From assembly GCA_002794465.1 (NCBI GenBank), contig MTSL01000121.1, positions 1 through 24,549 of the forward strand: a stretch of DNA of 24,549 nt, given 5' to 3'. The translations under genes were made by a program, and so were the position numbers. The notes under the pieces were generated by a model. That model saw only the letters and a list, made by a program, of their open reading frames with translations, did not search any database and was not told the origin of the DNA. Of this stretch, positions 791 through 17,528 are shown piece after piece; position 1 is the stretch's first letter, and every line of letters starts with the position of its first letter. This DNA is from Paramicrosporidium saccamoebae KSL3. Taxonomy: Eukaryota > Fungi > Cryptomycota.

Positions 791-2461
791 ATGGCGAAGC
801 ATATGCTTGGTTCTGCGCTTCTGGCCCAAACTCTGCACGATCAAGGGGTTAGGACAGTTTACGGAGTGCCCGGAATACCAATCACAAGCGTCGCAGAGGC
901 TCTCATAGCAAAGGGGGTCAATTACATTGCCTTTCGGAACGAGCAATCTGCGTCATATGCTGCCTCAGTACACGCATATATTAATGACCAATTTTCTATC
1001 GGAGTCCTGCTAACAACAGGAGGACCCGGGTTTGTTCATTCGCTGGCCGGAATAGTCAATGCCAGAGAAAATCTCTGGCCTCTCCTCGTCATTGTGGGGA
1101 CATGTCGGAACTCGCACAAATCGACCAGCTGCTTTCAAGACTGCCGACACGACCTGTTCCTCCAAAACGATCAATTTGTCCATTTCAGACGGCTATGCAG
1201 CGAGGATACACATGACATTTCTGGGGTAATAGCGCATCTCATCCAGCAAACGAAATCCAGCATAGGCCATTCAAAGATTATATCCATCTTGGAGGTCAGT
1301 TCCAAATGGCTTGAGATGACACTTGAATATCTTCCTGCCGAGTCTTGTCTCTTCTCAGCTCAAGAAACTGCGTTTAATGGCAAGGATATGATCCAGAATG
1401 CATTGAATGACATTAAAAAGGCACAAAGACCGTTGATCGTTTTCGGCAAAGGCGCGTGTTTGGGACGGCTTGACGAGCTCGCGCTGGAATTGGTAGAGAC
1501 TACGGGCGTGCCCTTTTTACTAATGCCCATGGCCAAGGGTCTAATAAGAGAGGATCATCCGCTCTGCATGTCAGCAGCTCGCACAAAGGCTCTCGCAGAC
1601 GCCACTCTTCTCATTCTCATCGGAGCCCGCGCCAATTGGATGTTGCCAGTAGACAGAATGTTAACAAATTCCCAGCTACAAATCCTGCGCATTGACATTC
1701 AGAGCAAGGATGCAGCCCTGAACAAAATGGAGAGTGATAACATCCGCAGTATAATTGGTGATTGTAGAGAGGTAATAGGTGCTCTGATCCAGGAAATGGA
1801 AAGCAAGTTTGAGTATCCCGAATGGATTGCGACTCTGCAGACTGCCAAAGAGGCAAATGTGCAACGTGTACTTTCCTTGTCAATAGACGAATCCCTGCCG
1901 CTTGGCTACCACGCCGTGTACAAAACGCTGAGCAAATACATTATAGAAGATACTACCGTTGTGGCCGAAGGGAGTAATACTATGGACATTGCCCGGGTAA
2001 TGTTGCCAACGTATCGACCTCGCTACCGACTCGATGCAGGAACGTTTGCAGCAATGGGAATCGGCATGTCCTATGCAATTGCTGCAGCTCTGACACGTCC
2101 CAACGAACCAATATTATACGTTGCCGGTGATAGTGCATTTGGGTTCAGTCTTGCCGAACTCGAAACTGCCGCCCGTTACGGACTATCTAATCTCACGGTG
2201 CTCGTGATGAACAACTCTGGAGTCTACAGCGGCGTCACCAAGGAGGAATTTGCCGCCAAGTGTCGCGAAACTCCAATTCCCCGTCACAAGCCCACTGCTC
2301 TGACACCCAACACGCGGTATGACAAACTAGCCGAGATGCTTCCGGAAATGGCTCAAGGATTTCTGGTCGAGACTTTGGATGACCTCAATCACGCATTGCA
2401 ATCAAAGAGCCCTATTCTGATTTCTGTTATAAATGTCCTTATAAGGACAGCCAACCAGTAG
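791..2461 (+). CDS. HACL1: 2-hydroxyacyl-CoA lyase 1 (TPP-dependent, HACL1/oxalyl-CoA decarboxylase family)
   Basis: N-terminal YGVPGIP and RNEQSASYAA (catalytic Glu), GPGFVHSLAG, RLDAGTFAAMGIGMSYAIAAA, and TPP motif GDSAFGFS...NNSG. Confidence 0.9.
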   Translation: MAKHMLGSALLAQTLHDQGVRTVYGVPGIPITSVAEALIAKGVNYIAFRNEQSASYAASVHAYINDQFSIGVLLTTGGPGFVHSLAGIVNARENLWPLLVIVGTCRNSHKSTSCFQDCRHDLFLQNDQFVHFRRLCSEDTHDISGVIAHLIQQTKSSIGHSKIISILEVSSKWLEMTLEYLPAESCLFSAQETAFNGKDMIQNALNDIKKAQRPLIVFGKGACLGRLDELALELVETTGVPFLLMPMAKGLIREDHPLCMSAARTKALADATLLILIGARANWMLPVDRMLTNSQLQILRIDIQSKDAALNKMESDNIRSIIGDCREVIGALIQEMESKFEYPEWIATLQTAKEANVQRVLSLSIDESLPLGYHAVYKTLSKYIIEDTTVVAEGSNTMDIARVMLPTYRPRYRLDAGTFAAMGIGMSYAIAAALTRPNEPILYVAGDSAFGFSLAELETAARYGLSNLTVLVMNNSGVYSGVTKEEFAAKCRETPIPRHKPTALTPNTRYDKLAEMLPEMAQGFLVETLDDLNHALQSKSPILISVINVLIRTANQ

Positions 2462-2483
2462 AATCGCTCCTCGTCCCTGCAGC

Positions 2484-2815
2484 ATGAAGGTGTCCGTTCT
2501 CTTGCTCCTGGTGCTTGCCATTTGCTCCAGCGTCTGTGCCATGGACATTTTTGACTTTTTCCGTGGTTCTCAAGGAGGTGGTCGTCGTGAAGGTAACGAA
2601 TTGGCAGCATGGTTCATGTTGTAGAACACAGCGTTGAGGCGGGCGGACGATGTTCCCACTACTTGTGTGATTTTCGGGTGGGTCCCTGTGTTGAAAATCC
2701 CAAAGATTGTCCGTGTCGCGAGGGACAATACAAGTGCCAGCACGGACCGGGTGATGCGTATTCCTGCATGGCCTCGAAAGAAGACTGTCAGCCCTTCCTC
2801 GCCAATGACCTCTAG
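2484..2815 (+). CDS. LCL2: LCL2-like small secreted/ER Cys-rich protein (long chronological lifespan protein 2 family), 99 aa, 2 exons
   Basis: Exons 2484-2592 and 2625-2815, with a 32-nt GTAACG...TAG intron. Protein MKVSVLLLLVLAICSSVCA-MDIFDFFRG...RCSHYLCDFRVGPCVENPKDCPC...C...C...C. The signal peptide, FDFF motif and CxxYLC...CV..P..CPC pattern match fungal LCL2. Confidence 0.75.
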
Positions 2816-2837
2816 TGTGTCTGGCTTGTGCAATACA

Positions 2838-3623
2838 TTATTTATTCCCTTTGCCTTTACTTGTGCCTGTACCTTTATCTGTAGCCTTGCTTTTGCCATT
2901 GGCCTTGCTCTTCTTTGGAGGCGACGAGTATTTCGCCTCCAGACTTGCTATCAGCGAATCATACCGTCCCTGTTGCCGCTGCTTGATCGCTGCCACAAGA
3001 CCATCCCTCCCGGCTCCCAAGCCTAACTCCTTGGCCAGCTCGGCAGCCTCAATTGCTTCAGTTTCAGCTCTTCTCCGGCGCTTGCGCTGTTTTGCCCGCC
3101 ACGCCGCATCCTCTGTATGCATGGGCAATGCATCGAATTGGGGAACAATGCCCTTGGCTACTGCGCGCCGGATAATGTCCAGATAGCGTGTCTCACTGTC
3201 CACATTTCCAAAGAAGATTGTCTCGGTAATCTTTTCAATATCGCCGCGGTGCGTAGTGTAGGCAGACAGAATGTCCTCATACTCCTCCAGGGAGCCCACA
3301 TAAGTGGCCCTGAAGGCATCAATGTCATCAAATGTTACCTTGTGGAAGAGTTCCCGAAAGTACGCGCTCCAATCACCTCCTTCGTCATTAATCATGCCAG
3401 TCTCGTCGTACAGTTTGCGACGAGCAGCGTCACTAAGGACTTCGTAGGCCAAGCCAACTTTTTGAAACATGGCAGTGGTCTCAGAGTCGCCATTGTTGCG
3501 GTCCGGATGATGCTGGAGGGCCAGCTTGTAGTAGGACTTTTTAATCTGCTCGGCGGATGCATCCGTCTCGACGCCAAGGACAACATAGAGATCATCCTGC
3601 TCTGTTGCCTTCTTCATAGGCAT
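2838..3623 (-). CDS. DNAJC9: J-domain protein, DNAJC9-like histone co-chaperone
   Basis: J domain with HPD (LYVVLGV...YYKLALQHHPDRN...FQKVGLAYEVLSD), a DNAJC9-typical YVGSLEEYEDILSAY segment, and a basic C-terminal tail. Confidence 0.85.
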   Translation of the reverse strand: MPMKKATEQDDLYVVLGVETDASAEQIKKSYYKLALQHHPDRNNGDSETTAMFQKVGLAYEVLSDAARRKLYDETGMINDEGGDWSAYFRELFHKVTFDDIDAFRATYVGSLEEYEDILSAYTTHRGDIEKITETIFFGNVDSETRYLDIIRRAVAKGIVPQFDALPMHTEDAAWRAKQRKRRRRAETEAIEAAELAKELGLGAGRDGLVAAIKQRQQGRYDSLIASLEAKYSSPPKKSKANGKSKATDKGTGTSKGKGNK

Positions 3624-3675
3624 ACTTTAACACGAATTTAATATTTTGGCAGAGTAACAATGTTTACTTAAATTA

Positions 3676-6600
3676 TTATTTGACGTTGTGCTTCTTGTGG
3701 GTTGCCTCCAAGAGTGCAGCTTCCTTATGAGCGTTACTGGAGCCTTTCAGGTGTTCAATGACCATGTCCCAGATGGAATGATGGTGCTGCTTCATGTCGC
3801 CGATATGCTTCATTGCTGACTTTTGCAACAGGTTGTCGGCAAGCGATACAGCATACTTTTTCAGATCCTCCTTGCTATGCTTTGCAGCAATGGAGGGTGA
3901 TGAACTGTCAGTCACGGGTTTCTGACTTTTCTGCTGTTGGCCGCTGTCAACCGTGGACTTTTCCGTGTGATGTGATGCGTCCACGGGGTGCTTCAATTGG
4001 GCACCAAGACCATTAACTTTGTTGCGCTGCTCGTGAATGGCTTGTTTTTGTGTCGAGAGATCTGTATTGTATTTGTGTGACGAGGAATTTTTAGCCTCGG
4101 AATCCGTAGCTTTCATCCCAGAAAGCAATTGTTCCAAAGAAGCCAGTGTCACTTTCTTGTGCTCAATATCAGGCGCATGAGGATTGTGAATAAGATCACT
4201 CTGAAGTTTATCCCGTAGCTTCTTGGTCTCTTTGATTAAAGTATTATGGGCGGAACAATGAGGGTGGGTGGCACCCGCAGTAGAGCAAAAGAGCGTCTTG
4301 TTCTTGTGGTAGTCGCTAATCATTTGGTCCAACTTGGCTTTTTCTGTCGCAAATTCTGCTTGAAGCTGTTCCCCTGTCTTTGTAGGAGACGGAGCAGCGT
4401 TAGTGGCACTAGACGAATCTGTGATTACTGGCACTATGGTAGTGGCCGTAGAAGCCGGAAGAGCTGAACCGGCTGAATTGGCTGGGGAAGGAGAGGCATT
4501 GGTGTGGGCATGATCCTCCACTTCTTCATGAGTGATAGAGTTTACGTCGTCAATGGCTTTCTGAACCTTGTTAGAAGCGACGTGCTCGTCAGCTTTGGCT
4601 GCTGGAGAAGTTTCCACAGTCTCCAACTTTTGCAACAAGTCCTTGGCCTTTTTAAGTGAAGTACGGACAGCTTTTAATTGCTTTTCAGCGTCTTGATGAC
4701 CAGGCTGTTTGGCAAGGATTTCATTCAGCTTTATGCGATGATCCTTCAAATTGGCTTCAATCTGTGCGACAGTTTGCTTGACCTTGTGAGATGTCGGATA
4801 GACAGTAGGTGGGATGATCAAATTGGTCATGACAGTCAGATCCTTGGCGAGCTGGGCCTCAACGTCAAGGAGATCTTTTTCCGTGTAGAGCGGATGACTC
4901 TTCTTGGTCTCTCTCGCTCTCCGAACCAGATCAATGGCGTCATGAAGATTTTGGTAGACGTAGAGCTCTTTTCTGAATTCCTTCAACTCGGCTCCTTGCT
5001 GTAAATGCAACAGTCTTCCCTTGTTCTTTCCAATAGCCGCGCGATGAATGGCAGCATCAGGGCTGGTCAGTGTAGCATCAGTAGCCGGGATGGCTTGGCT
5101 GGACACTGTAGTATTAACAGTAGAAGCAACTGGACTGGTCACTGTAGTATTGGCAGCAGGAACAACCGGCGCCGCACTGGGCGCTGTAGTAGTTGCGTTC
5201 TTGTAATGACAATCGTGTAATTCAAAACACGCGTGATCGACAAGTTTGCTAATCTCAAAGATGGTGGCCTGGTGTGGTCCACGGATCTGTGAAAGCTTTC
5301 TCATGTAGTACGCAACACTATGAATTGACTTGATAGCATCCTCGGCATTCACGGGTACAATGAATTCACTTTGTGCAAAAAGCTCCCATAGACGATGCAA
5401 GAGGTTGTAAAGTTCTGCAATTGCAGTCTTCTTCTCATTCTCAAGTGTCACTAGAGCTGATTGGTGTCCGCTGGTAATATCTGCAGTGGGCTTGGCAATA
5501 GCATTTTCCTTGTGTTCCAACTCGACGGCGTGTTTTGTGAGAACCTCCAGACTCTTTCTCAAATTAAATTCATAATGCTTCACTTGTTCAGAATGCTCCG
5601 GACCATCCATATGTCCCTTCAGGTGCTGAACAGCCTGCTGTCCTAGCGCCACTGCCTCACGAATTCTCTTCAGCTCTGGGATTCGCCCCAATGCCATAAT
5701 ATGAGCGTCAATGCTCATTTGGATTTCATGAATCTTGGCCCTGACAGTCTTGATCTGTTGTTTGAGGAGGGGGATTGTGTCGTTTGAATGAACTGGCACA
5801 CTTGTTGCGTGGGGAATGTCAGGAACGGGGGCGACAATCTCACTTGCCTCTATCTCCACCGCCTTGTCAAGTTTAGTGGAAAGTTCCTGCTCCACTGTCT
5901 TGCTCTCATTCTCCAAGGCCAAGATTTCTACCGAGGAGAGTCGACCTCCAGCGGCGGAATTATGCTTCTTCAGCAATTCAACAATGTGTCGAGCCAGTCT
6001 CTTGGCTTCCATGATATCTGCATCTTCCTTGTTGGCTCGATGCTTCACGAATCCCTCTGCTTTAAGACGTTGGTAAAGCTCCTTAACTTTTAGCTTGGCG
6101 GCAATGTATTCACTGATCAACTTCTGTCCCTGCACCCGTAATGCCTTCATGGCCCCTTTGCTCTTGTCACGATTTCTCGTCGCCAGTTGCTTTTCAGGAA
6201 CATTTAGAAGGGATTTGACAAGTCCTGTAAGTTTTACAAGATCCTCTCGGGCTTCTTTGATCCATGGTGCATTATCCTTGGCGCTGTAATTTTTCAAAAG
6301 ATGATCAAATGCAACCACTCGTAAAACCAGTTTAAAGTGCTTGGGAGACACGTCAGGTGTCATGAACCCATAGTTCTTTGAGTGCTCACTGAGCTTGGAG
6401 CGAACCTCTTTCACTCTAAGCTTTGCTGCCCTGTACTCGGCCTCTAATGGATTTTCCGGATGCAAGATGGTTTGGTTCCCCGGTAGTTTAGAGCCAGTCT
6501 CTTCAGATACCACAATGGACAACTCTGTTTTGACATTGTGGGCCAGCTGAGCAGTCTCCGCCACCAAAGACTGGGCTTCCGCTTTCTCGGCGGGCGTGGT

Positions 6601-7827
6601 TGCAGTAGACTTGTACAATTTGAATTCACTTTCTGCATTCAACAGATGCTGCTTGGCAGAGCGGATGCTGATCACATCAGGGTCGGATAGAACGTTGAGA
6701 GGTTTTGCCGTCTTGAATTGGGTACCATGCTTCTTGAGTTTGGTCTTGGCCTCCTTGAGCTGCTTAAGGAGCTGATTTGCCTGACTGTGGAGAGCTGTTC
6801 GTTCTTCGTCACTTAATGGACCACGGGACGCTTTAACAATTGCTCCATCTGGGATCGTAGTCAGACTGCTAATATCCTTCCTGGCAGCCGCAATGTGTGT
6901 CTTGGCGGCTATGAAATGTGCATTAGTTGCAACATTAACATGACGCTTGGCAAGACGGCGCTCCAAATCGTAAATGCGGAAGACGACTTTTTCATGTTCA
7001 GGCAGAGCGTATGCCATTCCGAGACGATCGTATATCTCTCTCAGTCGGGTTCTCAACTTTTTGACATGCTCCTTATCAGCATGATATTGCGCTGCAGCAC
7101 TTGCGGGAGCCGGCATAACGGCCAGTGGCTCGTGCTCCGCAAGCTGCTTATAATGCAAAGCAATGGTGGCGGCCAACAAGTTTTCTACGGCCGTTATAGC
7201 TGCAGTAAGGCCAGATTTTACGACAGAGCCCGTCTCTGATACCAATGCGCTCTTGAGGTTTGCATTAACGACTCCGAGGATGTTAATGACTTCTTGTCTG
7301 ATGTGCTTGCCAAGACCTCGTAACGTCGGCGTCGCAGTGACAAGGGCGGCACGTTGGCTCTTTAATTTCTGCAACTCTTCCAAATTTTGAGCCTTTCTCT
7401 TCAAGGCTGTAGCACGATCAGGGAAGAGGGGTGAATTAGTGTGTTGATCGAGTAACTTCCAGATCAGCGCCTTGGCATTGGCAAAATTGCTTTCGGCAGT
7501 GGTGATGGCAGCAATTGGCTCATGGAGAGCCTTGTGGGCGTTTCCAAGATCAGCCATGACGTTACTAGCTGCCGTCATTGTGGTCCTTACACGCTCCGCG
7601 TGGAAGCCGTGGGCGTAAATTGGATCATGCAAATACACACCAAGATGATAGAGGTGGATTTTCTTGTCTTCAATCTGTCTCTGAAGTTCCAAGTATTGTG
7701 TTTTTGCTCCATCGAATGGTTGAGGCGCCATTGACGATGTGGCACAGTCCACACTGACAAGTGCAAACAATAATACAAGGCAACTCCACAAATTCATGCT
7801 CATTGCGATGAAGAATATGGCATTCAA
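3676..7827 (-). CDS. Large (1383 aa) secreted orphan protein with repeated amphipathic helical units and T/A/S/P-rich linkers
   Basis: Uninterrupted 4.15-kb ORF with signal-peptide-like MSMNLWSCLVLLFALVSVDCA (true start may be Met9 or Met11). Rich in A/K/H/L/E, several N-x-S/T sequons, no C-terminal TM segment, no recognisable family motif. Confidence 0.85.
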   Translation of the reverse strand: MNAIFFIAMSMNLWSCLVLLFALVSVDCATSSMAPQPFDGAKTQYLELQRQIEDKKIHLYHLGVYLHDPIYAHGFHAERVRTTMTAASNVMADLGNAHKALHEPIAAITTAESNFANAKALIWKLLDQHTNSPLFPDRATALKRKAQNLEELQKLKSQRAALVTATPTLRGLGKHIRQEVINILGVVNANLKSALVSETGSVVKSGLTAAITAVENLLAATIALHYKQLAEHEPLAVMPAPASAAAQYHADKEHVKKLRTRLREIYDRLGMAYALPEHEKVVFRIYDLERRLAKRHVNVATNAHFIAAKTHIAAARKDISSLTTIPDGAIVKASRGPLSDEERTALHSQANQLLKQLKEAKTKLKKHGTQFKTAKPLNVLSDPDVISIRSAKQHLLNAESEFKLYKSTATTPAEKAEAQSLVAETAQLAHNVKTELSIVVSEETGSKLPGNQTILHPENPLEAEYRAAKLRVKEVRSKLSEHSKNYGFMTPDVSPKHFKLVLRVVAFDHLLKNYSAKDNAPWIKEAREDLVKLTGLVKSLLNVPEKQLATRNRDKSKGAMKALRVQGQKLISEYIAAKLKVKELYQRLKAEGFVKHRANKEDADIMEAKRLARHIVELLKKHNSAAGGRLSSVEILALENESKTVEQELSTKLDKAVEIEASEIVAPVPDIPHATSVPVHSNDTIPLLKQQIKTVRAKIHEIQMSIDAHIMALGRIPELKRIREAVALGQQAVQHLKGHMDGPEHSEQVKHYEFNLRKSLEVLTKHAVELEHKENAIAKPTADITSGHQSALVTLENEKKTAIAELYNLLHRLWELFAQSEFIVPVNAEDAIKSIHSVAYYMRKLSQIRGPHQATIFEISKLVDHACFELHDCHYKNATTTAPSAAPVVPAANTTVTSPVASTVNTTVSSQAIPATDATLTSPDAAIHRAAIGKNKGRLLHLQQGAELKEFRKELYVYQNLHDAIDLVRRARETKKSHPLYTEKDLLDVEAQLAKDLTVMTNLIIPPTVYPTSHKVKQTVAQIEANLKDHRIKLNEILAKQPGHQDAEKQLKAVRTSLKKAKDLLQKLETVETSPAAKADEHVASNKVQKAIDDVNSITHEEVEDHAHTNASPSPANSAGSALPASTATTIVPVITDSSSATNAAPSPTKTGEQLQAEFATEKAKLDQMISDYHKNKTLFCSTAGATHPHCSAHNTLIKETKKLRDKLQSDLIHNPHAPDIEHKKVTLASLEQLLSGMKATDSEAKNSSSHKYNTDLSTQKQAIHEQRNKVNGLGAQLKHPVDASHHTEKSTVDSGQQQKSQKPVTDSSSPSIAAKHSKEDLKKYAVSLADNLLQKSAMKHIGDMKQHHHSIWDMVIEHLKGSSNAHKEAALLEATHKKHNVK

Positions 7828-7864
7828 GAGCCCTTAAGTAATATATTCTCCATAATCGTCAGTG

Positions 7865-7960
7865 ATTGGCCAAAGGGGGGACTGTCCAATCACCCAAACC
7901 AAACTAGAGGGCCTATTGGACGAAACACAAAAATGCCAGTCAATCTGGAATAAGGCCAAT
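7865..7960 (-). promoter_or_regulatory. Cluster of four CCAAT/ATTGG boxes upstream of the large secreted protein gene
   Basis: ATTGG at 7865, CCAAT at 7886, ATTGG at 7915 and CCAAT at 7956, plus a G6 run at 7875-7880. Confidence 0.45.
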
Positions 7961-8016
7961 ACTGATAGGCTGAATGGGCAGCACCAATGAACATTTATGT
8001 TTTTGAGACAGTCATG

Positions 8017-9402
8017 TTATTCGTTCCTTGCGGTCCTCTTCCATTTTTCAAGCAGACTGTCTACAGAGACTGGTTCAGAATGGGGGTTAAATGTAAAGGA
8101 AGTATCACCTCCGTGTGCGATTAACTCCCGGGCGATTCCAATATTTCCAAGATATGCGGCCCACCAAAGTGCGCTTCGTCCATCCTGAGAATGATCATTA
8201 ATTAGCATAGAAAGTCTGTCTTTGGATACTTTTGCACCCTGAAACCAGGAAGTTAGGCTACGCAGACAGTCAAGTGATCCGGCCTTGACACAGGCAAAGA
8301 TGAGCTGGTGATAATCATCAGGAGGCGGGTCAGAATGAGAAATGAGCAATTTAAACGTATTTAGGCCGGGCGGTGAACGCGACAGTTCCAATAAAATATG
8401 ATCCAAAGCTGGCTTGATGCCAGATCTCAAAACAGCTTCAACGACCTTTTCCGATCCCGCCATAATTGCCGAGTGTAATACATCATGACCACAGGAATCA
8501 CGCAACATCCACATACTCGCATCACAGCGATCCATGATGAGCTGGACACATTCTACCGACGAGGAAAGAGCTGAATGATGAAGACACGTCCTCATGGCAA
8601 AATCTCTCGATGACAGATCCGCCTTGTTTTCTATAAGAAACTCGACAACTCTGGGTTGCCCACCACCGCAAGCGTACAATATGGGTGATGAGCCACTTGA
8701 AGAACTTACATAGGCAATAATCTTTGCAAACTTTTCAGGCTCGGATTCGCGAGCTTTTTGCATTACTTGCAAATGTCCATGGTATGCCAACACATGCAAC
8801 ATGTCTCCACGCCCCTCTTTGATTTCTTGAATAAACACATCGGTAGCAGCGTTCTGCCAAATGCGTGTTGCATCTAACGAAAAAGCGACCAATTCTTGAT
8901 AGGTCTGGTATGCGCCATCCGGATTGATTATGGCTACCACGGATTGCAAGCCCGGCCTACCCAACAATGCCGATAATTGCAACTTGTTCAGTCCAAATAC
9001 CACCGGCACTGAGAGCCGGTGCGCCTCAGCTAGCATCTCTCGCCAATCGACACTCCATTCCACATCCACCGCCATAACTAGAAGCCGTACCCGGCCAGCA
9101 CGCAAATGGCGAAGCGACTCTCGCAGTCCACAGACGAGACGCTTCTTTCCACGCTGAGAGTATCGATGCAGAGAAGTGAGCAAGAGATGCAATAGGGCGG
9201 TGGATTGATTTGTCAAGTGTTGAGAACAGTATGCCAGTGGCACACAATGCGTATCATGACGAGTCAGTCGCAGTGAGTAACGAACAAATTCATGTGGGGC
9301 CTCGATATAGCTTATATCTGGCAATTCTGGTGCCAGCTTTACCAACTGAGGCCGTGTCTTTTGCTGAGGGGCAAAATTAATCTGCAGACTCGATACAGGC
9401 AT
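8017..9402 (-). CDS. SECISBP2: SECIS-binding protein 2 (SBP2)-type L7Ae domain fused to C-terminal ankyrin repeats
   Basis: AYCSQHLT...LLTSLHRYSQRGKKRLVCGLRESLRHL...VPVVFGLNKLQLSALLGRPGLQSVVAIINPDGAYQTYQELV parallels recalled SBP2 (DYCSQML...LLKELVRFQDR...KRRLVLGLREVLKHL...IPFVFALNRKALG...VSVVGIFSYDGAQDQFHKMV). About 5-6 ankyrin repeats follow (SPILYACGGGQPRVVEFLIENKAD, RTCLHHSA, HDVLHSAIMAG, GRSALWWAAYLGNIGIARELIAHGGD). Confidence 0.75.
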   Translation of the reverse strand: MPVSSLQINFAPQQKTRPQLVKLAPELPDISYIEAPHEFVRYSLRLTRHDTHCVPLAYCSQHLTNQSTALLHLLLTSLHRYSQRGKKRLVCGLRESLRHLRAGRVRLLVMAVDVEWSVDWREMLAEAHRLSVPVVFGLNKLQLSALLGRPGLQSVVAIINPDGAYQTYQELVAFSLDATRIWQNAATDVFIQEIKEGRGDMLHVLAYHGHLQVMQKARESEPEKFAKIIAYVSSSSGSSPILYACGGGQPRVVEFLIENKADLSSRDFAMRTCLHHSALSSSVECVQLIMDRCDASMWMLRDSCGHDVLHSAIMAGSEKVVEAVLRSGIKPALDHILLELSRSPPGLNTFKLLISHSDPPPDDYHQLIFACVKAGSLDCLRSLTSWFQGAKVSKDRLSMLINDHSQDGRSALWWAAYLGNIGIARELIAHGGDTSFTFNPHSEPVSVDSLLEKWKRTARNE

Positions 9403-9603
9403 CTTCTGCGAGGGAATGAAATGTAAAGTTTCAAGTCACAGCTCAAAGTGCCACAATTATATACGTAAATCATATCGGATAAATCAAGGCCGTGAAAGAG
9501 CATATTTACAGATCAAATGCTTTCAATTGTACTACAAACTCCACACGCTTCACACACGGGTCTAATTTCTACAACCTGGAATAGCGGAGGGAAAAATGTA
9601 AAT

Positions 9604-11797
9604 TTATATGATAAAGTCGGGATCCAACATTGCTACAATTTTGTGAAGAGTTCGGGTGACCTGGTCAAAGGTGTCTCTATCTGTGCATTCCACACTATAA
9701 TCAGATTGCGAAACGGTCACCGTTTGATCATTGAGAGTAAACTGGTACACATTTTCATCGTCAATGTTCAGTTCTTGCAAAATACCAAAGTAGTTTTCTA
9801 AATAACTCTTAATCAAGACTTGGTGTCTATCCTTTGGTGGAATGACGGCAGCGTGGCTCAAATGATCGTGGTCGTGAGAGTGGTCATGTACATGAGAATG
9901 TTCGCTTTTGGTAGCCTTTACAGCTGCCCGAGACGATTCCGCACCAAGCAACAACATGACAATTGAATCTGCAGTAAGGTCGTTCATCGGGCTTCCTTCC
10001 CACTCCACAAGATACTCGCCCTTTCCGGCATTCTGAATTTGGAAACTGCCCATAACGACAAGTGATGAGTCGTCGGATGAGCATCGCTTTACATTCTTCT
10101 TGCCATACAGCTGGGATAGCAGATATTCGATTAGAGTAAAGGGAGCCCGACAAGTCACCGCCTGCCTCTCCAGGAGCTGCACTTTTCGCACATTCTGGAC
10201 GTATTCTGGCAGATCCTCAGTCTTGATGAGTTGGTATTCAAAATCCTTTCCCACCAAAACACCCTCTACAATAGAACCATCCACTTTGTTGGCGGGATCA
10301 GTGGCCAAATTACCAACAATCTTGATCATCTTTTCACCACGATAGCAAAGGTCGACGGACTCGCAATTCCTGGGCGTATGGATGTTAATAATCGTGTCCG
10401 TCTTGGTCCCGATCAGAAAACTTGCTGGAGTCAAATTCTTGTCTGAAATATTGTACTTGTGCTGAAGGGCAGACTTTAGACGGAGCATCTCGTTGGCCTC
10501 TCCGTGCACCAGAATGAGGTGAGGAGGTTTAAGAATATCAATAAACTCGCTGTTTTGAACAAAATCAACATGGGCAGAGAATGAAATATACTCGACACTC
10601 ATCCTCAACGGCATAGTGGCGCCAGAAAGTGCTGTGATTTCTTTGGGTTCGGTGAGAATTGTTTTGGCCAAAGTTCCCTCTACCACATAGCCCGGAATGA
10701 TCAGGCCGTTTTTGGGATTTGGACACCACAGCTCAAGCAGCTCTCTGCTAAGACCATTCTGCAACATGGCAGGACTGGCCATCATCACGCAAGGACCCGT
10801 ATCTTTGAGGTGTTCCATGCTCCGAAGATTGGCAACGTGTCTGAAGATGAATGGATTGGAGACGGCAATCTGTCGGCGGATGCGATCGTTCATCATATTG
10901 ACATAGGTCTGATATACTGACATGCATTTTTTGGCCAAGGGAGAGGCATAATAGACGGGAACACTGTGCAACTCGGGATGGGCCTGCCAATATTCATCGA
11001 GAATCAATAGCAATTCCTGGGCCCTTCCCAATGCAAAGACGGGAATAAGACATCGGCCACCGCGTCCAACAATCTCGTGCACAAGGTCAGTGAATCGCTT
11101 CTCACGCTCTAATCTCGGCTGATGGCTATGTACTCCATAGGTGGATTCGCAGACTAACACGTCGGGACGACTGGAGGGCGTCTCAGCTGCCATCAAATGA
11201 CGGTCCTCCTCTCTCGAGTAATCGCCCGTGTAGAGCACCTTTACTCCTGCAATTTCAATCAAGAACATGGCCGCTCCGAGTACATGGCCAGCGTTGAGGG
11301 CTGTGAATTTCACCCCATTCACCTCTACTTCTTGATGATAGTCAATGGGTGTGATGCGTTCGTAACTGCGGGTCAAGTCGGCTTCCGTATAAAGTTGGTC
11401 GTCGTCGCCGGCCACATTACTCACCTTGACATAATCAGCCAATAGCCATTTGTAAATGGCCTTTGTGGGATGTGTCATGTACACCTTGCCCTTAAAGCCC
11501 GTCTTTTCCATAAAATACGGCAGAGATGCTGCATGGTCCAAATGGAAACTACAATTTAGTAGAGTATTGGCGGTACTGGGTGATAAGAACAAGGTCTACC
11601 GTCTCAGGATCGATTTCATCAAAAAAGGGGAGGCCGGCAAGTCCCGTATACGCCGGATGAATGCCACAGTCCAACATGACTGTCTTTCCCTTAAAGCGCA
11701 GAATAATGCATGACCTTCCCACTTCGCTGCCAGCACCCAAAGGGGTGATGGATAACTGTTCAGAGCCAAAGAGCTCTACTGTCGGTCGCTTTGACAT
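9604..11797 (-). CDS. YSH1: Pre-mRNA 3'-end endonuclease CPSF73/Ysh1, about 721 aa, 2 exons
   Basis: Exons 11577-11797 and 9604-11548. Removing the 28-nt GTACCG...TAG intron restores the metallo-beta-lactamase motif ITHFHLDH. Also [65 protein letters not shown] and LVHGEANEM. Confidence 0.95.
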
Positions 11798-11812
11798 TCT
11801 AACAAAAACGCT

Positions 11813-12489
11813 TTATTCTTTTACTTTTATCGGTCCTGTCAGGGATTTATGGAAGGATTCGGGGTATTCTCGATAGGCCTTTTTGAAGTGCTCAACAGTA
11901 TTTGACAAGGCTATATTCCGTAAGAAATAAATAAAGGGACAGGGAAGGCTGGGAAGACTGCCGCTGACCGCATCGAACCGTGGAACATTTCCCGATCGAA
12001 TTGCGACCAAAAGATCGACTGCTGTCTGCAGCCAAGGAATACCCTTATTGAATCGCCACAGCAAGTGATTCAAGTCTTCGTTAGTGTTTAGGGACGATCC
12101 ATAGAACAGAAATAGCGCACAACTCACCCATCGTTGTTCTGCATCGACATAATACTCTAGCAAAAGTCGGTTTGCTGCTGCAGCAAACTCGGCGTATTCG
12201 CCCCTCTCCAGTGACAGCTCGGCACTGGCCTCGTAGACTCTGATAGCCACAGCGGCAGAATTCTTGCTCATGACAACAATTTCTCTCAACTTTCGCATAT
12301 CCATTGTCGTGCGCTCGTCCTAGCAATCAAATAATGGCATACGGTGGATGCCTTTTCAAGCGCAGCATCTAATAAAGCTTGGACTTTGTTGTCTGAAAGC
12401 GCTTTAAAGTGGGCGGGAAGGGTGCTTGAGCGACTGGGCAGATACAGGCCCTGAAACTCCTTTATCAATGTATCTACATCATCCGCCAT
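11813..12489 (-). CDS. PCI-fold / SAC3-GANP-THP3-like domain protein, about 217 aa, 2 exons
   Basis: Exons 12343-12489 and 11813-12319, joined across a 23-nt GTATGC...TAG intron, merge two track ORFs. MRKLREIVVMS...AIRVYEASAELSLERGEYAEF resembles SAC3/THP3 and CSN8-PSMD8-eIF3K helical repeats. Confidence 0.55.
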
Positions 12490-12542
12490 TGTGAGATAGT
12501 ATATTATATCCACAGACTAGGGATGAATAAACAAGAGTTATT

Positions 12543-13087
12543 TTATCGATAATCGGTCTTGTCGAATACTGAAGGATCTTTCGAGTACAAGTTGATTAGT
12601 CGTATCCTGCTGTCCTTGCCATTTGAAAAATTGGACATGACAATCAATCTCACGCAGAATGCGCTGACCGGCAGCTACATGTTAGGTATTTTAAAGGTCT
12701 ACATCATCGTTGCATTCGGTTAGACTTATCTGCACGGTATCATCATTGTCCTCAATGGTAATGCTTGTCACATCAAGGAGATGGTCGGGAGAGTCTCCCG
12801 CTTGAACAATGACAGCGGCTGGAGTATAACTTTCATCGCGGGCGTGATTCAGTTCCAACTCTAACGACTGCCAATCAGCTAAACACAATGGCTACTGTGA
12901 GCTGAATTCGTCGGGTAAAGTTGAATTGTATGTAATGAGGCAGCTGGCCTTCTGACCTACAAGGCAAGCAGGGCCAGCAAATCTACTGCCAATAAGTCTG
13001 CGAGTCCTTGTCGATTAGGAGCGAAGGCTCATGTCCCGTCTTCCATGAGGATGCCGATATGCACGCAAGTCTAGTGGCAACGACCAT
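12543..13087 (-). CDS. APC10: Anaphase-promoting complex subunit 10 (DOC domain), about 152 aa, 4 exons
   Basis: Exons 12987-13087, 12896-12956, 12703-12867 and 12543-12674, with introns of 30, 28 and 28 nt (all GTAG...AG). Spliced product SASSWKTGHEPSLLIDKDSQTYWQSEGQLPHYIQFNF...RDESYTP...SNFSNGKDSRIR has the APC10 motifs TYWQS, PH, DESYTP and NGKD. The start codon is uncertain. Confidence 0.85.
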
Positions 13088-13131
13088 CCACCACCGCCAG
13101 TCTCGGAAGGAAAATTGATTTTTATTCGGTA

Positions 13132-14113
13132 CTAAAACTCGCTTCCAAATCCTGAAAATGCGTCCGAAGGACGTCCACCAAAGACTAAACTTGAACAAAA
13201 GTTACAAATGTACCTGTGGATGAGTTTCCAAAAGGAGAAGTGTGTTCTACCCCGTTCATCACAGTGGGCGTAGCTATAGATGAACAGTGTCCCCATATAG
13301 TTAGTACAGGAAATGTTGGCTTTGGGAGGTTCTTTGATTTTAGAATCGTCTGACCAGTCTGTTAATCGGGTCGCCAACTTGGGATTGGACCCGTAACTAG
13401 ACGAAGAGCGTACATTTGTCATTAACGGTGCTAAAATTAATACTGCAGGCGTGCGTACTGGACATTGTAGCAGAATTTGAACCAAGAGTGTTCCGAGGCA
13501 TACTCACGTCACTCTCCATGTCACTCGAACCCGCATAATTCCTCAACAACATGGCTCCTTTCCGACGATCACCGACCACATCCAGTGCCGCCTTGGACAA
13601 TCCCAGCTGCTCCAATGTCGGAGTGTTTGGGAATGCGTCAAAGTCGATTCCTTCAGGTCGGGTGGCGGAGCGGGGAGTAGATTGCATGGCACGCTGACGG
13701 AGCGGCGTCGCAAAACGAGAAAGACGACGAGCACTGCCTTCAGTGGTAACATCCATCGTCGACATTGGTGTACTGGGCTGTGGACGGATAATGTCGTTGA
13801 GACGGTCAAGAAGAATGTCAGTCTGCTTTGGGTCCAAAGAATTTTGCAAATCATTTAGTGCACCATCAATACGCTTCAGCTCAGAAGAGTATTCGCTTGT
13901 AATGCTCATAACGACCGCTCGGTCTTCGGGAGCAATCGCACTGGTCTGATTCAGCAATCCGGTCAGTTTTGAGAGCTGCCTGTCGACCTCTTCTGACAAT
14001 TGTAAGAGTTGCTCTTTAGAGTCCAGCTCGGGAGTATCGTCCGTCATCAAAGTATCCATAGCAGACGACGGAATAGTCGCAGTGCTCTTAATCTTTGCCA
14101 AAAGGGCCAACAT
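13132..14113 (-). CDS. Putative kinetochore protein Ska3-like, about 296 aa, 4 inferred exons
   Basis: Exons 13459-14113, 13308-13430, 13214-13273 and 13132-13184 (introns 28, 34 and 29 nt) keep the frame. An N-terminal helical region of about 100 aa is followed by a disordered S/T-P-rich region containing PNTPTLEQLGLSK, comparable to the Ska3 motif PRSPQLSDFGLER. AATAAA lies just after the stop. Confidence 0.45.
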
Positions 14114-14165
14114 CGCGCCAACAAAAGCAATTAATTGATTTAATATCTTTCACAGAGTCGGTGCA

Positions 14166-15026
14166 ATGTTTCTTTCCAGGTTTGGCGAGCGTGGATTTTT
14201 GGGTGCTCTACGTCTCGTCCGCCATCTGTCCACTGCCAAGGCCGTGCCGGGAGGGAGCAGCAGGATTGGACAGCGATTCGCGCTTACGGGGACAGTTTGT
14301 TCCGGTCTTGCCGCCGGATATTATTATTCCTCCATTCCAATGGTCAGCGCCGCACCCAGCGCAGCTGAAAAGACTGGAGCTATGCAATCCTCCGCATTGC
14401 CGCCGCTTCCAAAGCTGGACACTAGCCACAGTGCAGCATTTAATGCAGAGAACACTACTGTTGTTTTTGTATTGGGCGGTCCCGGGGTCGGGAAAGGAAC
14501 ACAATGCACAAAGCTGGTCGAGGAATTTGATTTTGTGCACATCTCTGCCGGCGATCTGTTGCGAGATGAGCGTCAGAGGAAAGGATCACCTTACGGTGAG
14601 CTGATTGAACATTACCTGCGAGAGGGCAAGATTGTTCCTCACGAAATCACAATCTCTCTCATTCTCAATGCTATGAAGTCTAGCTCTCCTTCCAAAAATC
14701 GCTTCCTCATCGACGGCTTCCCCCGAAACATTGACCAAGGGATCGAATTTGAGACGGCCATTTGTCCTAGCAAAATGGTGCTCTTCTTTGAGTGCGGGGA
14801 GGACGAAATGCTGAAGCGACTAATGGTGAGAAGTCAGAGCAGCGGCCGCACCGATGATAACGTGGATTCTATTAAAAAGAGATTTAGGACGTTTCAGGAT
14901 TCCACGATGCCAGTGAGAGAGTTTTACAGCGACTTGGGCAAGCTGAGGGCTGTGAATTGTGTTGGAAGTGTCGGCGAAGTTTATGAACGCACCAAGAAAG
15001 CGGTGCATGAACTGGCAGAGATATAA
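14166..15026 (+). CDS. URA6: UMP-CMP kinase (adenylate kinase family) with N-terminal mitochondrial-type extension
   Basis: VVFVLGGPGVGKGTQC P-loop, HISAGDLLRDE, FLIDGFPRN and GRTDDNVDSIKKRF. Arg-rich, acid-poor N-terminus MFLSRFGERGFLGALRLVRHLST. Confidence 0.92.
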   Translation: MFLSRFGERGFLGALRLVRHLSTAKAVPGGSSRIGQRFALTGTVCSGLAAGYYYSSIPMVSAAPSAAEKTGAMQSSALPPLPKLDTSHSAAFNAENTTVVFVLGGPGVGKGTQCTKLVEEFDFVHISAGDLLRDERQRKGSPYGELIEHYLREGKIVPHEITISLILNAMKSSSPSKNRFLIDGFPRNIDQGIEFETAICPSKMVLFFECGEDEMLKRLMVRSQSSGRTDDNVDSIKKRFRTFQDSTMPVREFYSDLGKLRAVNCVGSVGEVYERTKKAVHELAEI

Positions 15027-15034
15027 GACTCCCA

Positions 15035-16072
15035 ATGCAACTGACCTCCCAGTCTAAAAATAAACCGTTAATGTCTTTTGTTAGACGGACGACGAGCACT
15101 GGTTTGGACAAATGTCCTCGGGGTTGCCGTACCACCGCTTCAGACGTCGTGGTTACTGGCACCGGCGTGCCATCATTTGATAAACTCTTCCTCAACGGCT
15201 TGCCAGTAGGCTCTGTTATTGCCATCCGCGAAGATTGGCCACGGTCCTCCTCAAATTACTCCAGTTGCTTGTTGAAATGCATCTGCGCCGAGGCGCTCTC
15301 TGCTGGCCAGCATTTACTTTACATTGATGAGACTGAATGTGACACTTTTCTCAGTGCCCTTCCCGCCCCGGGAAAGTGCGAAGAGCAAGGCGAAGCTGTC
15401 CAAGACGAAAAAATGACCATTGCTTGGAGGTACAAGCATTTGCGTAGCTTTGACGATGCACCAGCGGCAAAGGTGCAGGATCGCGTATTTGACCTGGGGA
15501 AAAAGATGGATGCAGTCGAACTTGCAAAAGGAACTGTGGTGACTGCGACCACGCTAGATCTGGAAAAAGTTGAGAAATTATTACACGCCGCCAAGAAGGA
15601 GAATACTGTTTTGAAGGTCGTTTTGCGTTCCTTTGCGTCCCCGTTATATTTACCTGGTGAGTGCGCCAGATTGTTATATCAACTGCGCCAACTTGCGGCA
15701 TTGCACCCTTCTAATGTAATCATCTTCCTTACCATCCCAGCCTATACCTTTTCGTCAAATTCCACAGAGCTGGCAGACATTGAGAGTCAATGCGATCTTG
15801 TCATTGATATTCAGTCATTCGTTGGGACTCCCCAAGAAAGGATCCGTGCGCTCAACGAGTATAATGGATTTCTGCGTATCGTCAAGCCTTTGCGTGTTCC
15901 CGGCTCCTTGGCGCTGGCGATTCCAGAGACTAATGATCTTGCCTTCAAGGTAAAGAAACGGCAGCTATACTTTGAGGCGTTTCATCTTCCCCCTGATTCA
16001 GACGTCTCCACTCCACAGACTGTATCCACAACTGGCTGCAACTCGATGGAGACAAATAAACTAGACTTTTAA
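15035..16072 (+). CDS. ELP4: Elongator complex subunit 4
   Basis: TGVPSFDKLFLNGLPVGSV, MTIAWRY, FDLGK, LAFKVKKRQLYFEAFHLPP and C-terminal LDF. Confidence 0.9.
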   Translation: MQLTSQSKNKPLMSFVRRTTSTGLDKCPRGCRTTASDVVVTGTGVPSFDKLFLNGLPVGSVIAIREDWPRSSSNYSSCLLKCICAEALSAGQHLLYIDETECDTFLSALPAPGKCEEQGEAVQDEKMTIAWRYKHLRSFDDAPAAKVQDRVFDLGKKMDAVELAKGTVVTATTLDLEKVEKLLHAAKKENTVLKVVLRSFASPLYLPGECARLLYQLRQLAALHPSNVIIFLTIPAYTFSSNSTELADIESQCDLVIDIQSFVGTPQERIRALNEYNGFLRIVKPLRVPGSLALAIPETNDLAFKVKKRQLYFEAFHLPPDSDVSTPQTVSTTGCNSMETNKLDF

Positions 16073-16115
16073 TGAGTTCTAAGATTACGATTTTGGGACG
16101 AGAGTGATGTGACTT

Positions 16116-16190
16116 TATGACGGTGGTGAACTTTCCATATAGAGATATGACAGTGGTGAACTTTTCATATAAAAATGTCATGACAGTGGT
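16116..16190. repeat. Short direct repeat (30-nt unit, about 2.4 copies) spanning the IDO stop codon
   Basis: tatgacggtggtgaactttccatatagaga (16116-16145), tatgacagtggtgaacttttcatataaaaa (16146-16175) and partial catgacagtggt (16179-16190). Confidence 0.8.
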
Positions 16191-17498: not shown

Positions 17499-17528
17499 CC
17501 CCCCGACACCAAGCAAAACCTTTTTTAT

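What the first reader, a model, noticed from the sequence alone, without database searches (positions are those of the whole stretch)
8017..9402. SBP2 (SECIS-binding) domain fused to ankyrin repeats: selenocysteine machinery or a repurposed relic
Seen: an L7Ae domain preceded by the YCSQ-x-L...LLxxLxRY helix and followed by the SVVAIINPDGAY-type tail, both features of SBP2 rather than eL8/eL30/Snu13/Nhp2, then about 5-6 ankyrin repeats in one uninterrupted frame. Established: SBP2 is required for eukaryotic UGA-Sec recoding; most fungi and canonical microsporidia lack Sec, and only a few early-diverging fungi retain it. Inference: either this reduced genome still decodes Sec, or an orphan SBP2 gained ankyrins and a new kink-turn RNA-binding role. 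I do not recall an SBP2-ankyrin fusion. The Lys-rich SID motif is weak or absent here.
Basis: partly seen in the sequence, partly recalled or inferred. Interest (0 to 1): 0.85.

Follow-up and report, generated by a model that had tools for sequence, protein, structure and literature searches.

The report
Fungal-type SBP2 with ankyrin tail
A compact genome from a little-known, fungus-related lineage encodes the RNA-binding protein that normally directs insertion of selenocysteine (SBP2) with ankyrin repeats where the usual helper domain would be; a selenium-using water mould-like fungus has the same layout, so this may be the fungal form of the selenocysteine machinery, not a one-off oddity.

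Summary
Window 8017-9402 (-) is one uninterrupted 461-aa ORF. It has a disordered N-terminus (aa 1-57), an SBP2-type L7Ae module (aa 58-188) and about seven ankyrin-like repeats (aa 198-433).

A profile built only from this protein's orthologues matches human SBP2 at E 4e-22 (82 bits). The next L7Ae family, L30e, scores 17 bits.

The fusion is a real, conserved gene. At least 12 divergent orthologues (24-77% identity, 354-506 aa) are colinear over both halves. All but one (P0002, whose contig was not read) were seen next to the CPSF73 gene, in a block shared by an unnamed deep-branching fungal clade (Rozellomycota-like).

It is not unique to that clade. The annotated "SBP2-like" protein of Gonapodya sp. 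JEL0774 carries half of its L7Ae module and its ankyrin repeats in a single exon, and shares the unusual last-repeat motif GRxxLWWAA. Gonapodya prolifera, in the same genus, is a documented selenocysteine user.

My best reading (about 0.55) is a fungal-type SECIS-binding protein in which ankyrin repeats replace the SID. The rival (about 0.3) is a repurposed kink-turn binder in a Sec-less lineage. The rest of the Sec machinery could not be examined from this window.

The parts
8017..9402 (-). Whole gene: 461-aa SBP2-ankyrin protein (ATG at 9402-9400, stop codon at 8019-8017)
   Evidence: Single ORF. Pfam finds L7Ae plus Ank. Full-length colinear orthologues exist.
9232..9402 (-). N-terminal region, aa 1-57. 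Predicted disordered. Carries short family-conserved motifs (M-x-V/I-S-x-L/F-x-I; Y-I/L-x-D/E-P-x-x-F-V-x-x-S-L). No SID and no Lys-rich domain.
   Evidence: pLDDT below 50 over aa 1-34 and 36-57. Family alignment. Coordinates checked.
9157..9231 (-). SBP2-specific helix in front of the L7Ae core, aa 58-82 (YCSQHLTNQSTALLHLLLTSLHRYS)
   Evidence: Aligns to human SBP2 632-655. AF2 helix at 65-82. Y632, L649 and L652 equivalents are conserved in both the fusion family and canonical SBP2s.
8914..9147 (-). L7Ae core, aa 86-163 (Pfam PF01248)
   Evidence: E 1.3e-8. The fold is confirmed by AF2 and Foldseek.
9109..9129 (-). Kink-turn-binding motif GLRESLR, aa 92-98 (human G676-L677-R678-E679-V680-L681-K682)
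   Evidence: G and E are invariant in the family and 95-100% conserved in canonical SBP2s. R is kept in 8 of 11 fusion proteins aligned, K in one and A in two. E679D is a human disease mutation in this module (PMC8658020).
8908..8943 (-). SVVAIINPDGAY strand-and-loop signature, aa 154-165
   Evidence: Aligns to human S745-Q756. S, G and A are conserved. The identical INPDGAY occurs in the non-fused SBP2-like protein P0009.
8812..8910 (-). Long connecting helix, aa 165-197. [quoted passage not shown]
   Evidence: AF2 helix at 165-196, pLDDT 86-95. The HMM alignment to human SBP2 extends to residue 783.
8104..8811 (-). Ankyrin-repeat domain, aa 198-433 (about seven helix-pair repeats)
   Evidence: Pfam Ank families. 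PDB and Foldseek hits to DARPins and ankyrins. AF2 helix pairs.
8146..8181 (-). Atypical last-repeat motif GRSALWWAAYLG, aa 408-419, with W where ankyrin repeats normally have H
   Evidence: Among the proteins fetched, the motif occurs only in fusion-family members, P0222 and the Gonapodya SBP2-like protein. In 22 background repeats the position was H, D or M and never W.
8020..8064 (-). C-terminal helix, aa 447-461 (VDSLLEKWKRTARNE), conserved as LLEKWK in most of the family
9604..11592 (-). Upstream neighbour CPSF73/Ysh1. It is not part of the protein, but it is the conserved syntenic anchor used to find orthologues.
   Evidence: Pfam. The same adjacency appears in L001, L003, L004, L007, L011-L013, L015-L017, and inverted in L008.

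Best explanation
The gene encodes this lineage's member of the SBP2 (SECIS-binding protein 2) family, in a 'fungal-type' architecture. A short disordered N-terminus is followed by the SBP2 kink-turn RNA-binding module, whose C-terminal helix continues into a rigid ankyrin-repeat platform. The platform sits where other SBP2s have nothing. The upstream Sec-incorporation domain (SID) and Lys-rich region are missing.

Shown:
- The module is SBP2-type.
- The fusion is a single gene.
- The fusion is old and under purifying selection.
- The same architecture exists in Gonapodya.

Inferred:
- The L7Ae module binds the kink-turn of SECIS-like elements in selenoprotein mRNAs.
- The ankyrin platform supplies the protein-protein contacts (ribosome and/or the eEFSec-Sec-tRNA complex) that the SID supplies elsewhere.
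- The organism therefore still recodes UGA as selenocysteine.

Confidence is about 0.95 that this is a genuine SBP2-family/ankyrin fusion gene, and about 0.55 that it works in Sec decoding.
For: Identity as SBP2:
- A profile of five fusion orthologues only matches human SBP2 7zjw_B at E 4.2e-22 and 81.9 bits over residues 631-783. The next hit is L30e at E 0.027 and 17.1 bits.
- The single sequence already ranks SBP2 first.
- Foldseek with the N-terminal model ranks SBP2 on the 80S ribosome first, at E 2e-10 over 201 columns.
- An exhaustive HMMER search of 1.84 billion representatives finds, after the fusion family itself, mostly long proteins with the L7Ae module near the C-terminus, which is the SBP2 layout. 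These include proteins from Cyanophora, Diphylleia, Spirogloea and a fish.
- Signature positions G676, E679, R672, R731 (K/R), S745, G754 and A755 are conserved.

One real gene:
- At least 12 colinear orthologues at 24-77% identity have no stop between the halves.
- All of them except P0002, whose contig was not read, were seen next to CPSF73.

Link to Sec:
- The Gonapodya sp. JEL0774 protein KAJ3338991.1, annotated as SBP2-like, has the same order of domains.
- The second half of its L7Ae module and all its ankyrin repeats lie in one exon.
- Its module also matches human SBP2 best, at E 6e-17.
- It aligns colinearly with the window protein in both halves and shares the GRxxLWWAA motif.
- Gonapodya prolifera is a documented Sec user (10.1101/314781).
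- Amses et al. report Sec in every fungal phylum except four. Rozellomycota is not among the four exceptions (PMC9457484).
- A SID is not obligatory. C. elegans SBP2 is an RNA-binding domain only and is essential for Sec insertion (PMC4114682).
- The gene is missing at the syntenic site in two lineages nested within the clade, which reads as secondary loss. That punctate pattern resembles the pattern of Sec-trait loss.
Against: - No other Sec component was seen. There is no tRNA-Sec, no SECIS and no recognisable selenoprotein gene in the window or in 137 kb of related loci. That is far too little sequence to count as absence.
- The one thiol peroxidase in the window uses Cys (TGC).
- The Lys-rich region needed by mammalian SBP2 for SECIS selectivity is absent.
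- Two family members have Ala at the R678 position (GVAE, GIAE), and the whole family has A-V/I-D where canonical SBP2s mostly have A-P/N-N. RNA specificity may therefore have shifted.
- The L7Ae-only distance analysis does not group the family with the Gonapodya domain; distances are saturated. Common origin of the architecture rests on domain order and one motif.
- I did not verify that Gonapodya sp. JEL0774 itself has the Sec trait. I also did not check whether it has a second, non-fused SBP2.
Confidence: 0.55

Rival explanations
1. Repurposed relic. The lineage has lost selenocysteine, and the SBP2-ankyrin protein survives because it acquired another job. It would act as a kink-turn RNA-binding adaptor that tethers ankyrin-bound partners to some other K-turn RNA (an mRNA, snoRNA/snRNA or rRNA).
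For: - The SID and K-rich region are absent.
- R678 is replaced by Ala in the L003/P0154 sub-clade, and the family shows an A-V/I-D change in the second RNA-binding loop.
- The genome is compact and related to lineages generally considered Sec-less.
- No Sec gene or SECIS was found in the sequence available.
- Fungal SECIS elements are not recognisable even in Sec users, so RNA specificity in this family is evidently plastic (10.1101/314781).
Against: - As far as I recall, in documented cases of Sec loss SBP2 is lost with the rest of the machinery. In plant-parasitic nematodes only SecP43 was retained (PMC4114682).
- The same architecture occurs in a genus that uses Sec.
- Most family members keep the G-x-R-E-x-x-R signature.
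- The punctate loss of the gene in nested lineages fits a dispensable trait better than a new essential function.
Confidence: 0.3
2. Ankyrin-bearing paralogue. Fungi have, or had, two SBP2-family genes: a canonical SECIS binder and this ankyrin form with a related but distinct role, analogous to vertebrate SBP2 and SBP2L. The window gene would be the second kind, whether or not Sec is used.
For: - Vertebrate SBP2/SBP2L shows that the family can duplicate and diverge (PMC2746813).
- I could not check whether Gonapodya has another SBP2.
- The L7Ae-domain distances do not resolve relationships.
Against: - Among the 150 best hits of the exhaustive search, the only named fungal protein among the 20 whose names I looked up was the ankyrin-bearing Gonapodya one.
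- The preprint reports fungal SBP2s as one monophyletic, highly divergent cluster (10.1101/314781).
Confidence: 0.1
3. The L7Ae domain belongs to another family (eL30, eL8, Snu13, Nhp2, Rpp38) and only superficially resembles SBP2. Alternatively, the ORF is an assembly or annotation chimera of two genes.
For: - Pfam alone cannot tell L7Ae families apart.
- The fold is shared, and archaeal L7Ae is a close second in Foldseek at E 6e-8.
Against: - There is a 65-bit margin in favour of SBP2 in the profile search, and the alignment covers the SBP2-only flanking helices.
- The architecture is identical in at least 12 independent assemblies from different samples and in one Gonapodya exon.
Confidence: 0.03

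Closest known systems
Human/mammalian SECISBP2 (SBP2; PDB 7ZJW/7ZJX chain B)
   Same: The L7Ae-type RNA-binding module, including the SBP2-specific preceding helix (YCSQ...LL..L.RF) and following helix. Also the G-L-R-E-x-x-K/R motif, the R731 and I749 equivalents, and the S-V-V-G/A-I...D-G-A strand-loop.
   Different: The window protein has no 400-aa N-terminal region, no SID and no Lys-rich domain (domains as described in PMC8658020). It has about 270 aa of ankyrin repeats after the module, where human SBP2 has only a short tail. It also has A-V-D where human SBP2 has S-P-N in the second loop.
Gonapodya sp. JEL0774 'SECIS-binding protein 2-like' KAJ3338991.1 (P0178)
   Same: The same domain order: SBP2 module, then a helix, then ankyrin repeats, ending in a GRxxLWWAA repeat. 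It aligns colinearly with the window protein in both halves. Part of the module and all the repeats lie in one exon.
   Different: It is 937 aa, with a roughly 360-aa N-terminal extension that contains K/R-rich stretches just upstream of the module. It sits in a different genomic context with no CPSF73 neighbour. The module is only 27% identical.
Nematode SBP2 (C. elegans scbp-2)
   Same: It is a SID-less SBP2 consisting essentially of the RNA-binding module, and it is still essential for Sec insertion (PMC4114682). This is the precedent that lack of a SID does not exclude Sec function.
   Different: It is 153 aa with no added domain. The window protein adds an ankyrin platform.
Other L7Ae/K-turn binders (archaeal L7Ae, eL30/L30e, eL8, Snu13/15.5K, Nhp2)
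   Same: The same alpha/beta sandwich fold and K-turn-binding surface (Foldseek TM 0.8-0.9 to the target over about 120 residues).
   Different: Sequence scores are 17 bits or lower, against 82 bits for SBP2. They lack the flanking SBP2 helices. None carries ankyrin repeats.

Membership tests
SBP2 / SECISBP2 family | L7Ae (Pfam PF01248) alpha/beta RNA-binding fold | tested here: met
   Pfam E 1.3e-8. AF2 N-terminal model with pLDDT 85-97 over aa 60-190. Foldseek hits to L7Ae-fold proteins.
SBP2 / SECISBP2 family | The module is closer in sequence to SBP2 than to eL30, eL8, Snu13, Nhp2 or L7Ae | tested here: met
   The orthologue-only profile scores 81.9 bits (E 4e-22) against human SBP2 and 17.1 bits against the best other L7Ae protein. 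The single sequence scores 31.4 against 24.5 bits.
SBP2 / SECISBP2 family | SBP2-specific helices flanking the L7Ae core (Y-C-S-Q...L-L-x-x-L-x-R-F before it, a long helix after it) | tested here: met
   The alignment covers human residues 631-783. AF2 predicts helices at 65-82 and 165-196. Conservation table.
SBP2 / SECISBP2 family | RNA-contact signature G676-x-R678-E679-x-x-K682, plus R731 and I749. The list of contact residues is recalled from Allmang et al. 2002, which I could not retrieve. E679D and C691R are taken from PMC8658020. | tested here: met
   The window has G92, R94, E95, R98, K140 and I158. G and E are invariant in the family. R678 is replaced by A in 2 of 11 members.
SBP2 / SECISBP2 family | Lys-rich region upstream of the L7Ae module (part of the mammalian RBD) | tested here: not met
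   Aa 1-57 contain 2 Lys and 5 Arg and are predicted disordered. Gonapodya does have K/R-rich stretches upstream.
SBP2 / SECISBP2 family | Sec-incorporation domain (SID) | tested here: not met
   Only 57 residues lie upstream of the module, and the KK..LKK.IL.ER-type motif seen in the consensus of canonical SBP2s is absent (consensus). This is not disqualifying, because nematode SBP2 also lacks a SID (PMC4114682).
SBP2 / SECISBP2 family | Binds SECIS elements and supports UGA-to-Sec recoding | not testable with these tools
   This needs EMSA or recoding assays. Fungal SECIS elements are not yet defined (10.1101/314781).
SBP2 / SECISBP2 family | Co-occurs with tRNA-Sec, eEFSec, PSTK, SecS, SPS2 and selenoprotein genes | tested here: inconclusive
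   None was found in the 24.5-kb window or in 137 kb of related loci.
Ankyrin-repeat proteins | Tandem 33-residue helix-turn-helix repeats that form a stacked solenoid | tested here: met
   Ank_2 E 9e-21, Ank E 2e-17 and Ank_3 E 6e-15. DARPin and ankyrin hits by sequence and by fold. AF2 helix pairs with pLDDT mostly 87-97.

The most novel reading that the evidence does not exclude
SBP2 plus a C-terminal ankyrin platform is the ancestral fungal form of the SECIS-binding protein, with the ankyrin repeats doing the job of the missing SID. It persists, along with selenocysteine decoding, in an unnamed clade of compact-genome, Rozellomycota-like organisms. That would put Sec use on the branch leading towards Microsporidia. 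It would also offer a protein-side explanation for why fungal SECIS elements cannot be recognised with animal-based models.
Probability: 0.4. Interest if true: 0.75.

Novelty: new variant of a known kind. Interest (0 to 1): 0.6.

Why it matters
SBP2 is the factor that decides whether a UGA codon is read as selenocysteine in eukaryotes. How it couples the SECIS RNA to the ribosome and eEFSec is still debated.

A naturally occurring SBP2 that lacks the SID and K-rich region but carries a rigid protein-binding platform gives a second, independent solution to that coupling. This form is conserved across very divergent lineages and shared with a Sec-using fungal genus. It can be dissected by asking what the ankyrins bind.

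It also provides a convenient marker for finding Sec-using lineages among uncultured early-diverging fungi. In addition, it gives a handle on the unsolved problem of fungal SECIS elements (10.1101/314781).

If the lineage instead turns out to be Sec-less, this would be the first case I know of in which SBP2 outlives the Sec trait with a new RNA target.

No paper in the searchable library mentions SBP2, ankyrin and selenocysteine together. The Gonapodya protein is only an automatic annotation.

Tried and rejected
- **Domain tree.** A neighbour-joining and distance analysis of 166 SBP2-type modules was meant to place the family relative to Gonapodya and canonical SBP2s. Distances are saturated at 0.7-0.75 and give no resolution. 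The profile-versus-PDB score margin stands in for it.
- **Selenoprotein scan.** I translated with TGA read through and ran tblastn against the syntenic loci. The result was dominated by off-frame alignments of conserved genes and is uninformative.
- **'Redoxin' fragments.** Split Redoxin gene calls next to IDO looked like a possible UGA-interrupted selenoprotein. They turned out to be a Prx5-type gene split by roughly 31-nt introns, with a TGC Cys codon.
- **Naming the organism.** All nearer CPSF73 relatives are unnamed metagenome, Logan or unannotated NCBI sequences. The assembly accession of one relative is not in the paper library. GC content and gene density match the published Paramicrosporidium saccamoebae figures, but that is only compatibility.
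- **Functional link to CPSF73.** I rejected this. The whole multi-gene block is syntenic, so adjacency is not specific to this pair.
- **Pfam scan of all 141 non-family hits.** It exceeded the residue limit. I replaced it with local phmmer and hmmsearch using an ankyrin consensus and the family's C-terminal profile.
- **Papers not held.** Allmang et al. 2002 and the final Mariotti 2019 paper were not available.
Full report
**What is in the sequence**

Window 8017-9402 on the minus strand is one uninterrupted ORF of 461 codons. Pfam places a Ribosomal_L7Ae domain at aa 86-163 (E 1.3e-8). It places several ankyrin families between about aa 200 and 433 (Ank_2 E 9e-21, Ank E 2e-17).

AlphaFold2 was run with a 20-row alignment and gives mean pLDDT 83.5 and pTM 0.75. 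The model has these parts:
- aa 1-57 are disordered;
- a helix at aa 65-82;
- an L7Ae alpha/beta core;
- a long helix at aa 165-196 that runs straight into about seven stacked helix pairs;
- a final helix at aa 447-460.

These are the YCSQ...LL..L.RY helix, the SVVAIINPDGAY tail, ankyrin repeats in the same frame, and the absence of a Lys-rich or SID segment. Coordinates were checked.

**Is the L7Ae module really SBP2-type?**

Yes.
- With aa 1-199 alone, the best PDB sequence match is human SBP2 (7zjw_B, E 1.3e-6). The match covers aa 58-188 against human 632-779, so it includes the flanks outside the generic L7Ae core. Archaeal L30e follows at E 1.7e-4.
- I then built a profile from five orthologues of the fusion protein only, with no canonical SBP2 in it. 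Human SBP2 scores 81.9 bits (E 4.2e-22, residues 631-783). The best other L7Ae-family protein scores 17.1 bits.
- Foldseek with a model of the N-terminal half ranks SBP2 on the SECIS-programmed 80S ribosome first (7zjx_B, E 2e-10, 201 columns). Archaeal L7Ae is second at E 6e-8. Even the full-length model has 7zjx_B as its only non-ankyrin hit near the top.
- An exhaustive HMMER search of 1.84 billion representative proteins returns the fusion family first. After that come mostly long proteins with the module near their C-terminus, which is the SBP2 layout. The named ones come from Cyanophora, Diphylleia, Spirogloea, a tardigrade and a fish.
- Position by position, the family keeps G676, E679, R672, R731 (as K or R), S745, G754 and A755 in human numbering. 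E679 is the site of a human disease mutation in this module (PMC8658020).

**Is the fusion one real gene?**

Yes. The first database search found a full-length orthologue at 41% identity (P0003) and a partial one at 77%. P0003 lies between CPSF73 and a large secreted protein, exactly as in the window.

I used the CPSF73 neighbour as an anchor and added the exhaustive search. Together they recovered more members:
- L003:9728-11173;
- L004:10103-11542, which is close to but not identical with P0154;
- L007:7562-9058, which equals P0152;
- P0150 (L011, on a 140-kb JGI contig);
- P0151, P0153 and P0156;
- the more divergent P0222 (L015, on a 367-kb contig) and P0239/P0305 (L017).

The family members are 354-506 aa long and 24-77% identical. 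They are colinear over both halves with no stop between them. All but P0002, whose contig was not read, were seen adjacent to CPSF73 (inverted in L008). That rules out a chimera and shows long-term purifying selection on the whole architecture.

**Where does the organism sit?**

The window is a gene-dense eukaryotic contig. It has a U5 snRNA and tiny introns of about 31 nt. It encodes pyruvate decarboxylase, DnaJC9, CPSF73, adenylate kinase, Elp4, IDO, kinases and SIL1.

The nearest named CPSF73 relatives are early-diverging fungi: Rozella at 67% identity over 70% of the query, Synchytrium at 62%, and other chytrids and Glomeromycota. In neighbour-joining trees the window falls in a large clade made up entirely of unnamed metagenomic, Logan or unannotated sequences. 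That clade is separate from chytrids and zygomycetes.

GC content (about 47%) and coding density match the published figures for Paramicrosporidium saccamoebae (PMC5701793). That is compatibility only, not identification. I therefore call it a Rozellomycota-like, deep-branching fungal lineage.

**The key comparative result**

I screened the 150 best SBP2-type hits for ankyrin repeats. [quoted passage not shown] JEL0774, 937 aa.
- Its module also matches human SBP2 best (E 6e-17, against 1e-4 for Nhp2).
- The module is followed by ankyrin repeats.
- In the genome, residues 456-937 are a single exon. That exon holds the second half of the L7Ae module and all the repeats.
- BLASTP against the window protein gives two colinear matches: aa 40-187 to 364-525 at E 2e-14, and aa 272-433 to 662-829 at E 6e-8.
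- Both proteins end their repeat array with the unusual motif GR(S/T)xLWWAA, with Trp where ankyrin repeats normally have His. Among all fetched proteins, only the family, P0222 and the Gonapodya protein have it.

Gonapodya prolifera is one of the fungi shown to have the Sec machinery and selenoproteins (10.1101/314781). So the SBP2-ankyrin layout is not an orphan invention of this genome. It is shared with a genus that uses selenocysteine, and it probably predates the split of these lineages.

**Function**

*Shown:* this is an SBP2-family kink-turn-binding module rigidly joined to an ankyrin platform, and it has been conserved for a very long time.

*Inferred:* it is the lineage's SECIS-binding protein, and the ankyrin repeats replace the SID as the protein-protein interface to the ribosome and/or eEFSec.

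Points in favour:
- the Gonapodya link;
- the rule, as far as I recall, that SBP2 disappears when Sec is lost (nematode example: PMC4114682);
- the precedent of a SID-less but essential SBP2 in C. elegans;
- the gene's absence at the syntenic site in two lineages (L002 = GCA_047514055.1, and L009). These are nested inside gene-bearing lineages in the CPSF73 tree. That makes the absence a secondary loss, the punctate pattern typical of the Sec trait.

Points against:
- No other Sec component could be seen. There is no tRNA-Sec or SECIS in the window or in 137 kb of relatives. That is far too little sequence to be meaningful.
- The only thiol peroxidase in the window uses Cys.
- There is no Lys-rich region.
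- R678 is Ala in one sub-clade, and the family has A-V/I-D where canonical SBP2s mostly have A-P/N-N in the second loop.
- The homology of the architectures rests on domain order and one motif, because the module tree is saturated.

I put Sec decoding at about 0.55. A repurposed kink-turn adaptor in a Sec-less lineage gets about 0.3. A distinct ankyrin-bearing paralogue gets about 0.1. Misassignment or chimera gets about 0.03.

**Novelty**

The protein belongs to a known family (SBP2), but in an architecture I could not find described. No paper in the searchable library combines SBP2, ankyrin and selenocysteine. The fungal Sec preprint notes only that fungal SBP2 is highly divergent and that fungal SECIS elements are unrecognisable. 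I therefore rate it a new variant of a known kind, of moderate-to-high interest.

The decisive test is simple but outside this window. It is a census of the Sec machinery in the full assemblies that carry or lack this gene, and a census of SBP2 architectures in all Sec-using fungi.

Noticed in passing
window 22349-22462 (+): A full-length U5 spliceosomal snRNA gene (Rfam RF00020, 81.9 bits). Syntenic copies are in L004:668-783, L008:10860-10981 and L011:989-1099.
   Followed up: partly
window 17529-18082 (-): A Prx5-type peroxiredoxin gene is broken into small ORFs by very short introns. One is about 31 nt, with GTACGT at the 5' end, a TTCTAAC branch site and an AG 3' end. The peroxidatic residue is Cys (TGC), not a UGA/Sec codon.
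   Followed up: yes
window 3676-7827 (-): A 1383-aa protein with a signal-peptide-like N-terminus, a long coiled-coil or low-complexity character and no Pfam match. It lies immediately downstream of the SBP2-ankyrin gene. Syntenic counterparts of 864-1412 aa exist in every related locus. Its function is unknown, and I did not test whether it could be a polar-tube-type or surface protein.
   Followed up: no
window 18531-19472, 19661-20767, 21004-22035 (+): Three tandem protein-kinase genes, each with a hydrophobic, signal-peptide-like N-terminus. This could be a small family of secreted kinases.
   Followed up: no
window 9604-11592 (-) and 16178-16801 (-): The CPSF73 ORF starts at position 49 of the Lactamase_B_6 profile, and the IDO ORF covers only profile positions 193-408. 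Both genes probably have short 5' exons separated by tiny introns, so ORF lists under-call genes in this genome.
   Followed up: partly
window about 800-18100, compared with L001-L013 and L015-L017: The block PDC - DnaJC9 - big secreted protein - SBP2-ankyrin - CPSF73 - APC10 - ADK - Elp4 - IDO - Prx5 keeps its order, in whole or in part, across organisms whose SBP2-ankyrin proteins are only 24-40% identical. This is microsporidia-like conservation of synteny.
   Followed up: partly
L002:12088-12497 (NCBI GCA_047514055.1) and L009:12136-13118: In these two relatives CPSF73 is followed directly by the big secreted protein, and no remnant of the SBP2-ankyrin gene is detectable by tblastn. The CPSF73 tree places them inside gene-bearing lineages, so this is secondary loss or relocation.
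   Followed up: yes
protein P0313 (MBX9640501.1), in the cluster of P0032: A fragment of this eukaryotic clade's CPSF73 is deposited as 'MAG: MBL fold metallo-hydrolase [Mycobacteriaceae bacterium]'. A eukaryotic contig appears to have been mis-binned into a bacterial MAG.
   Followed up: no
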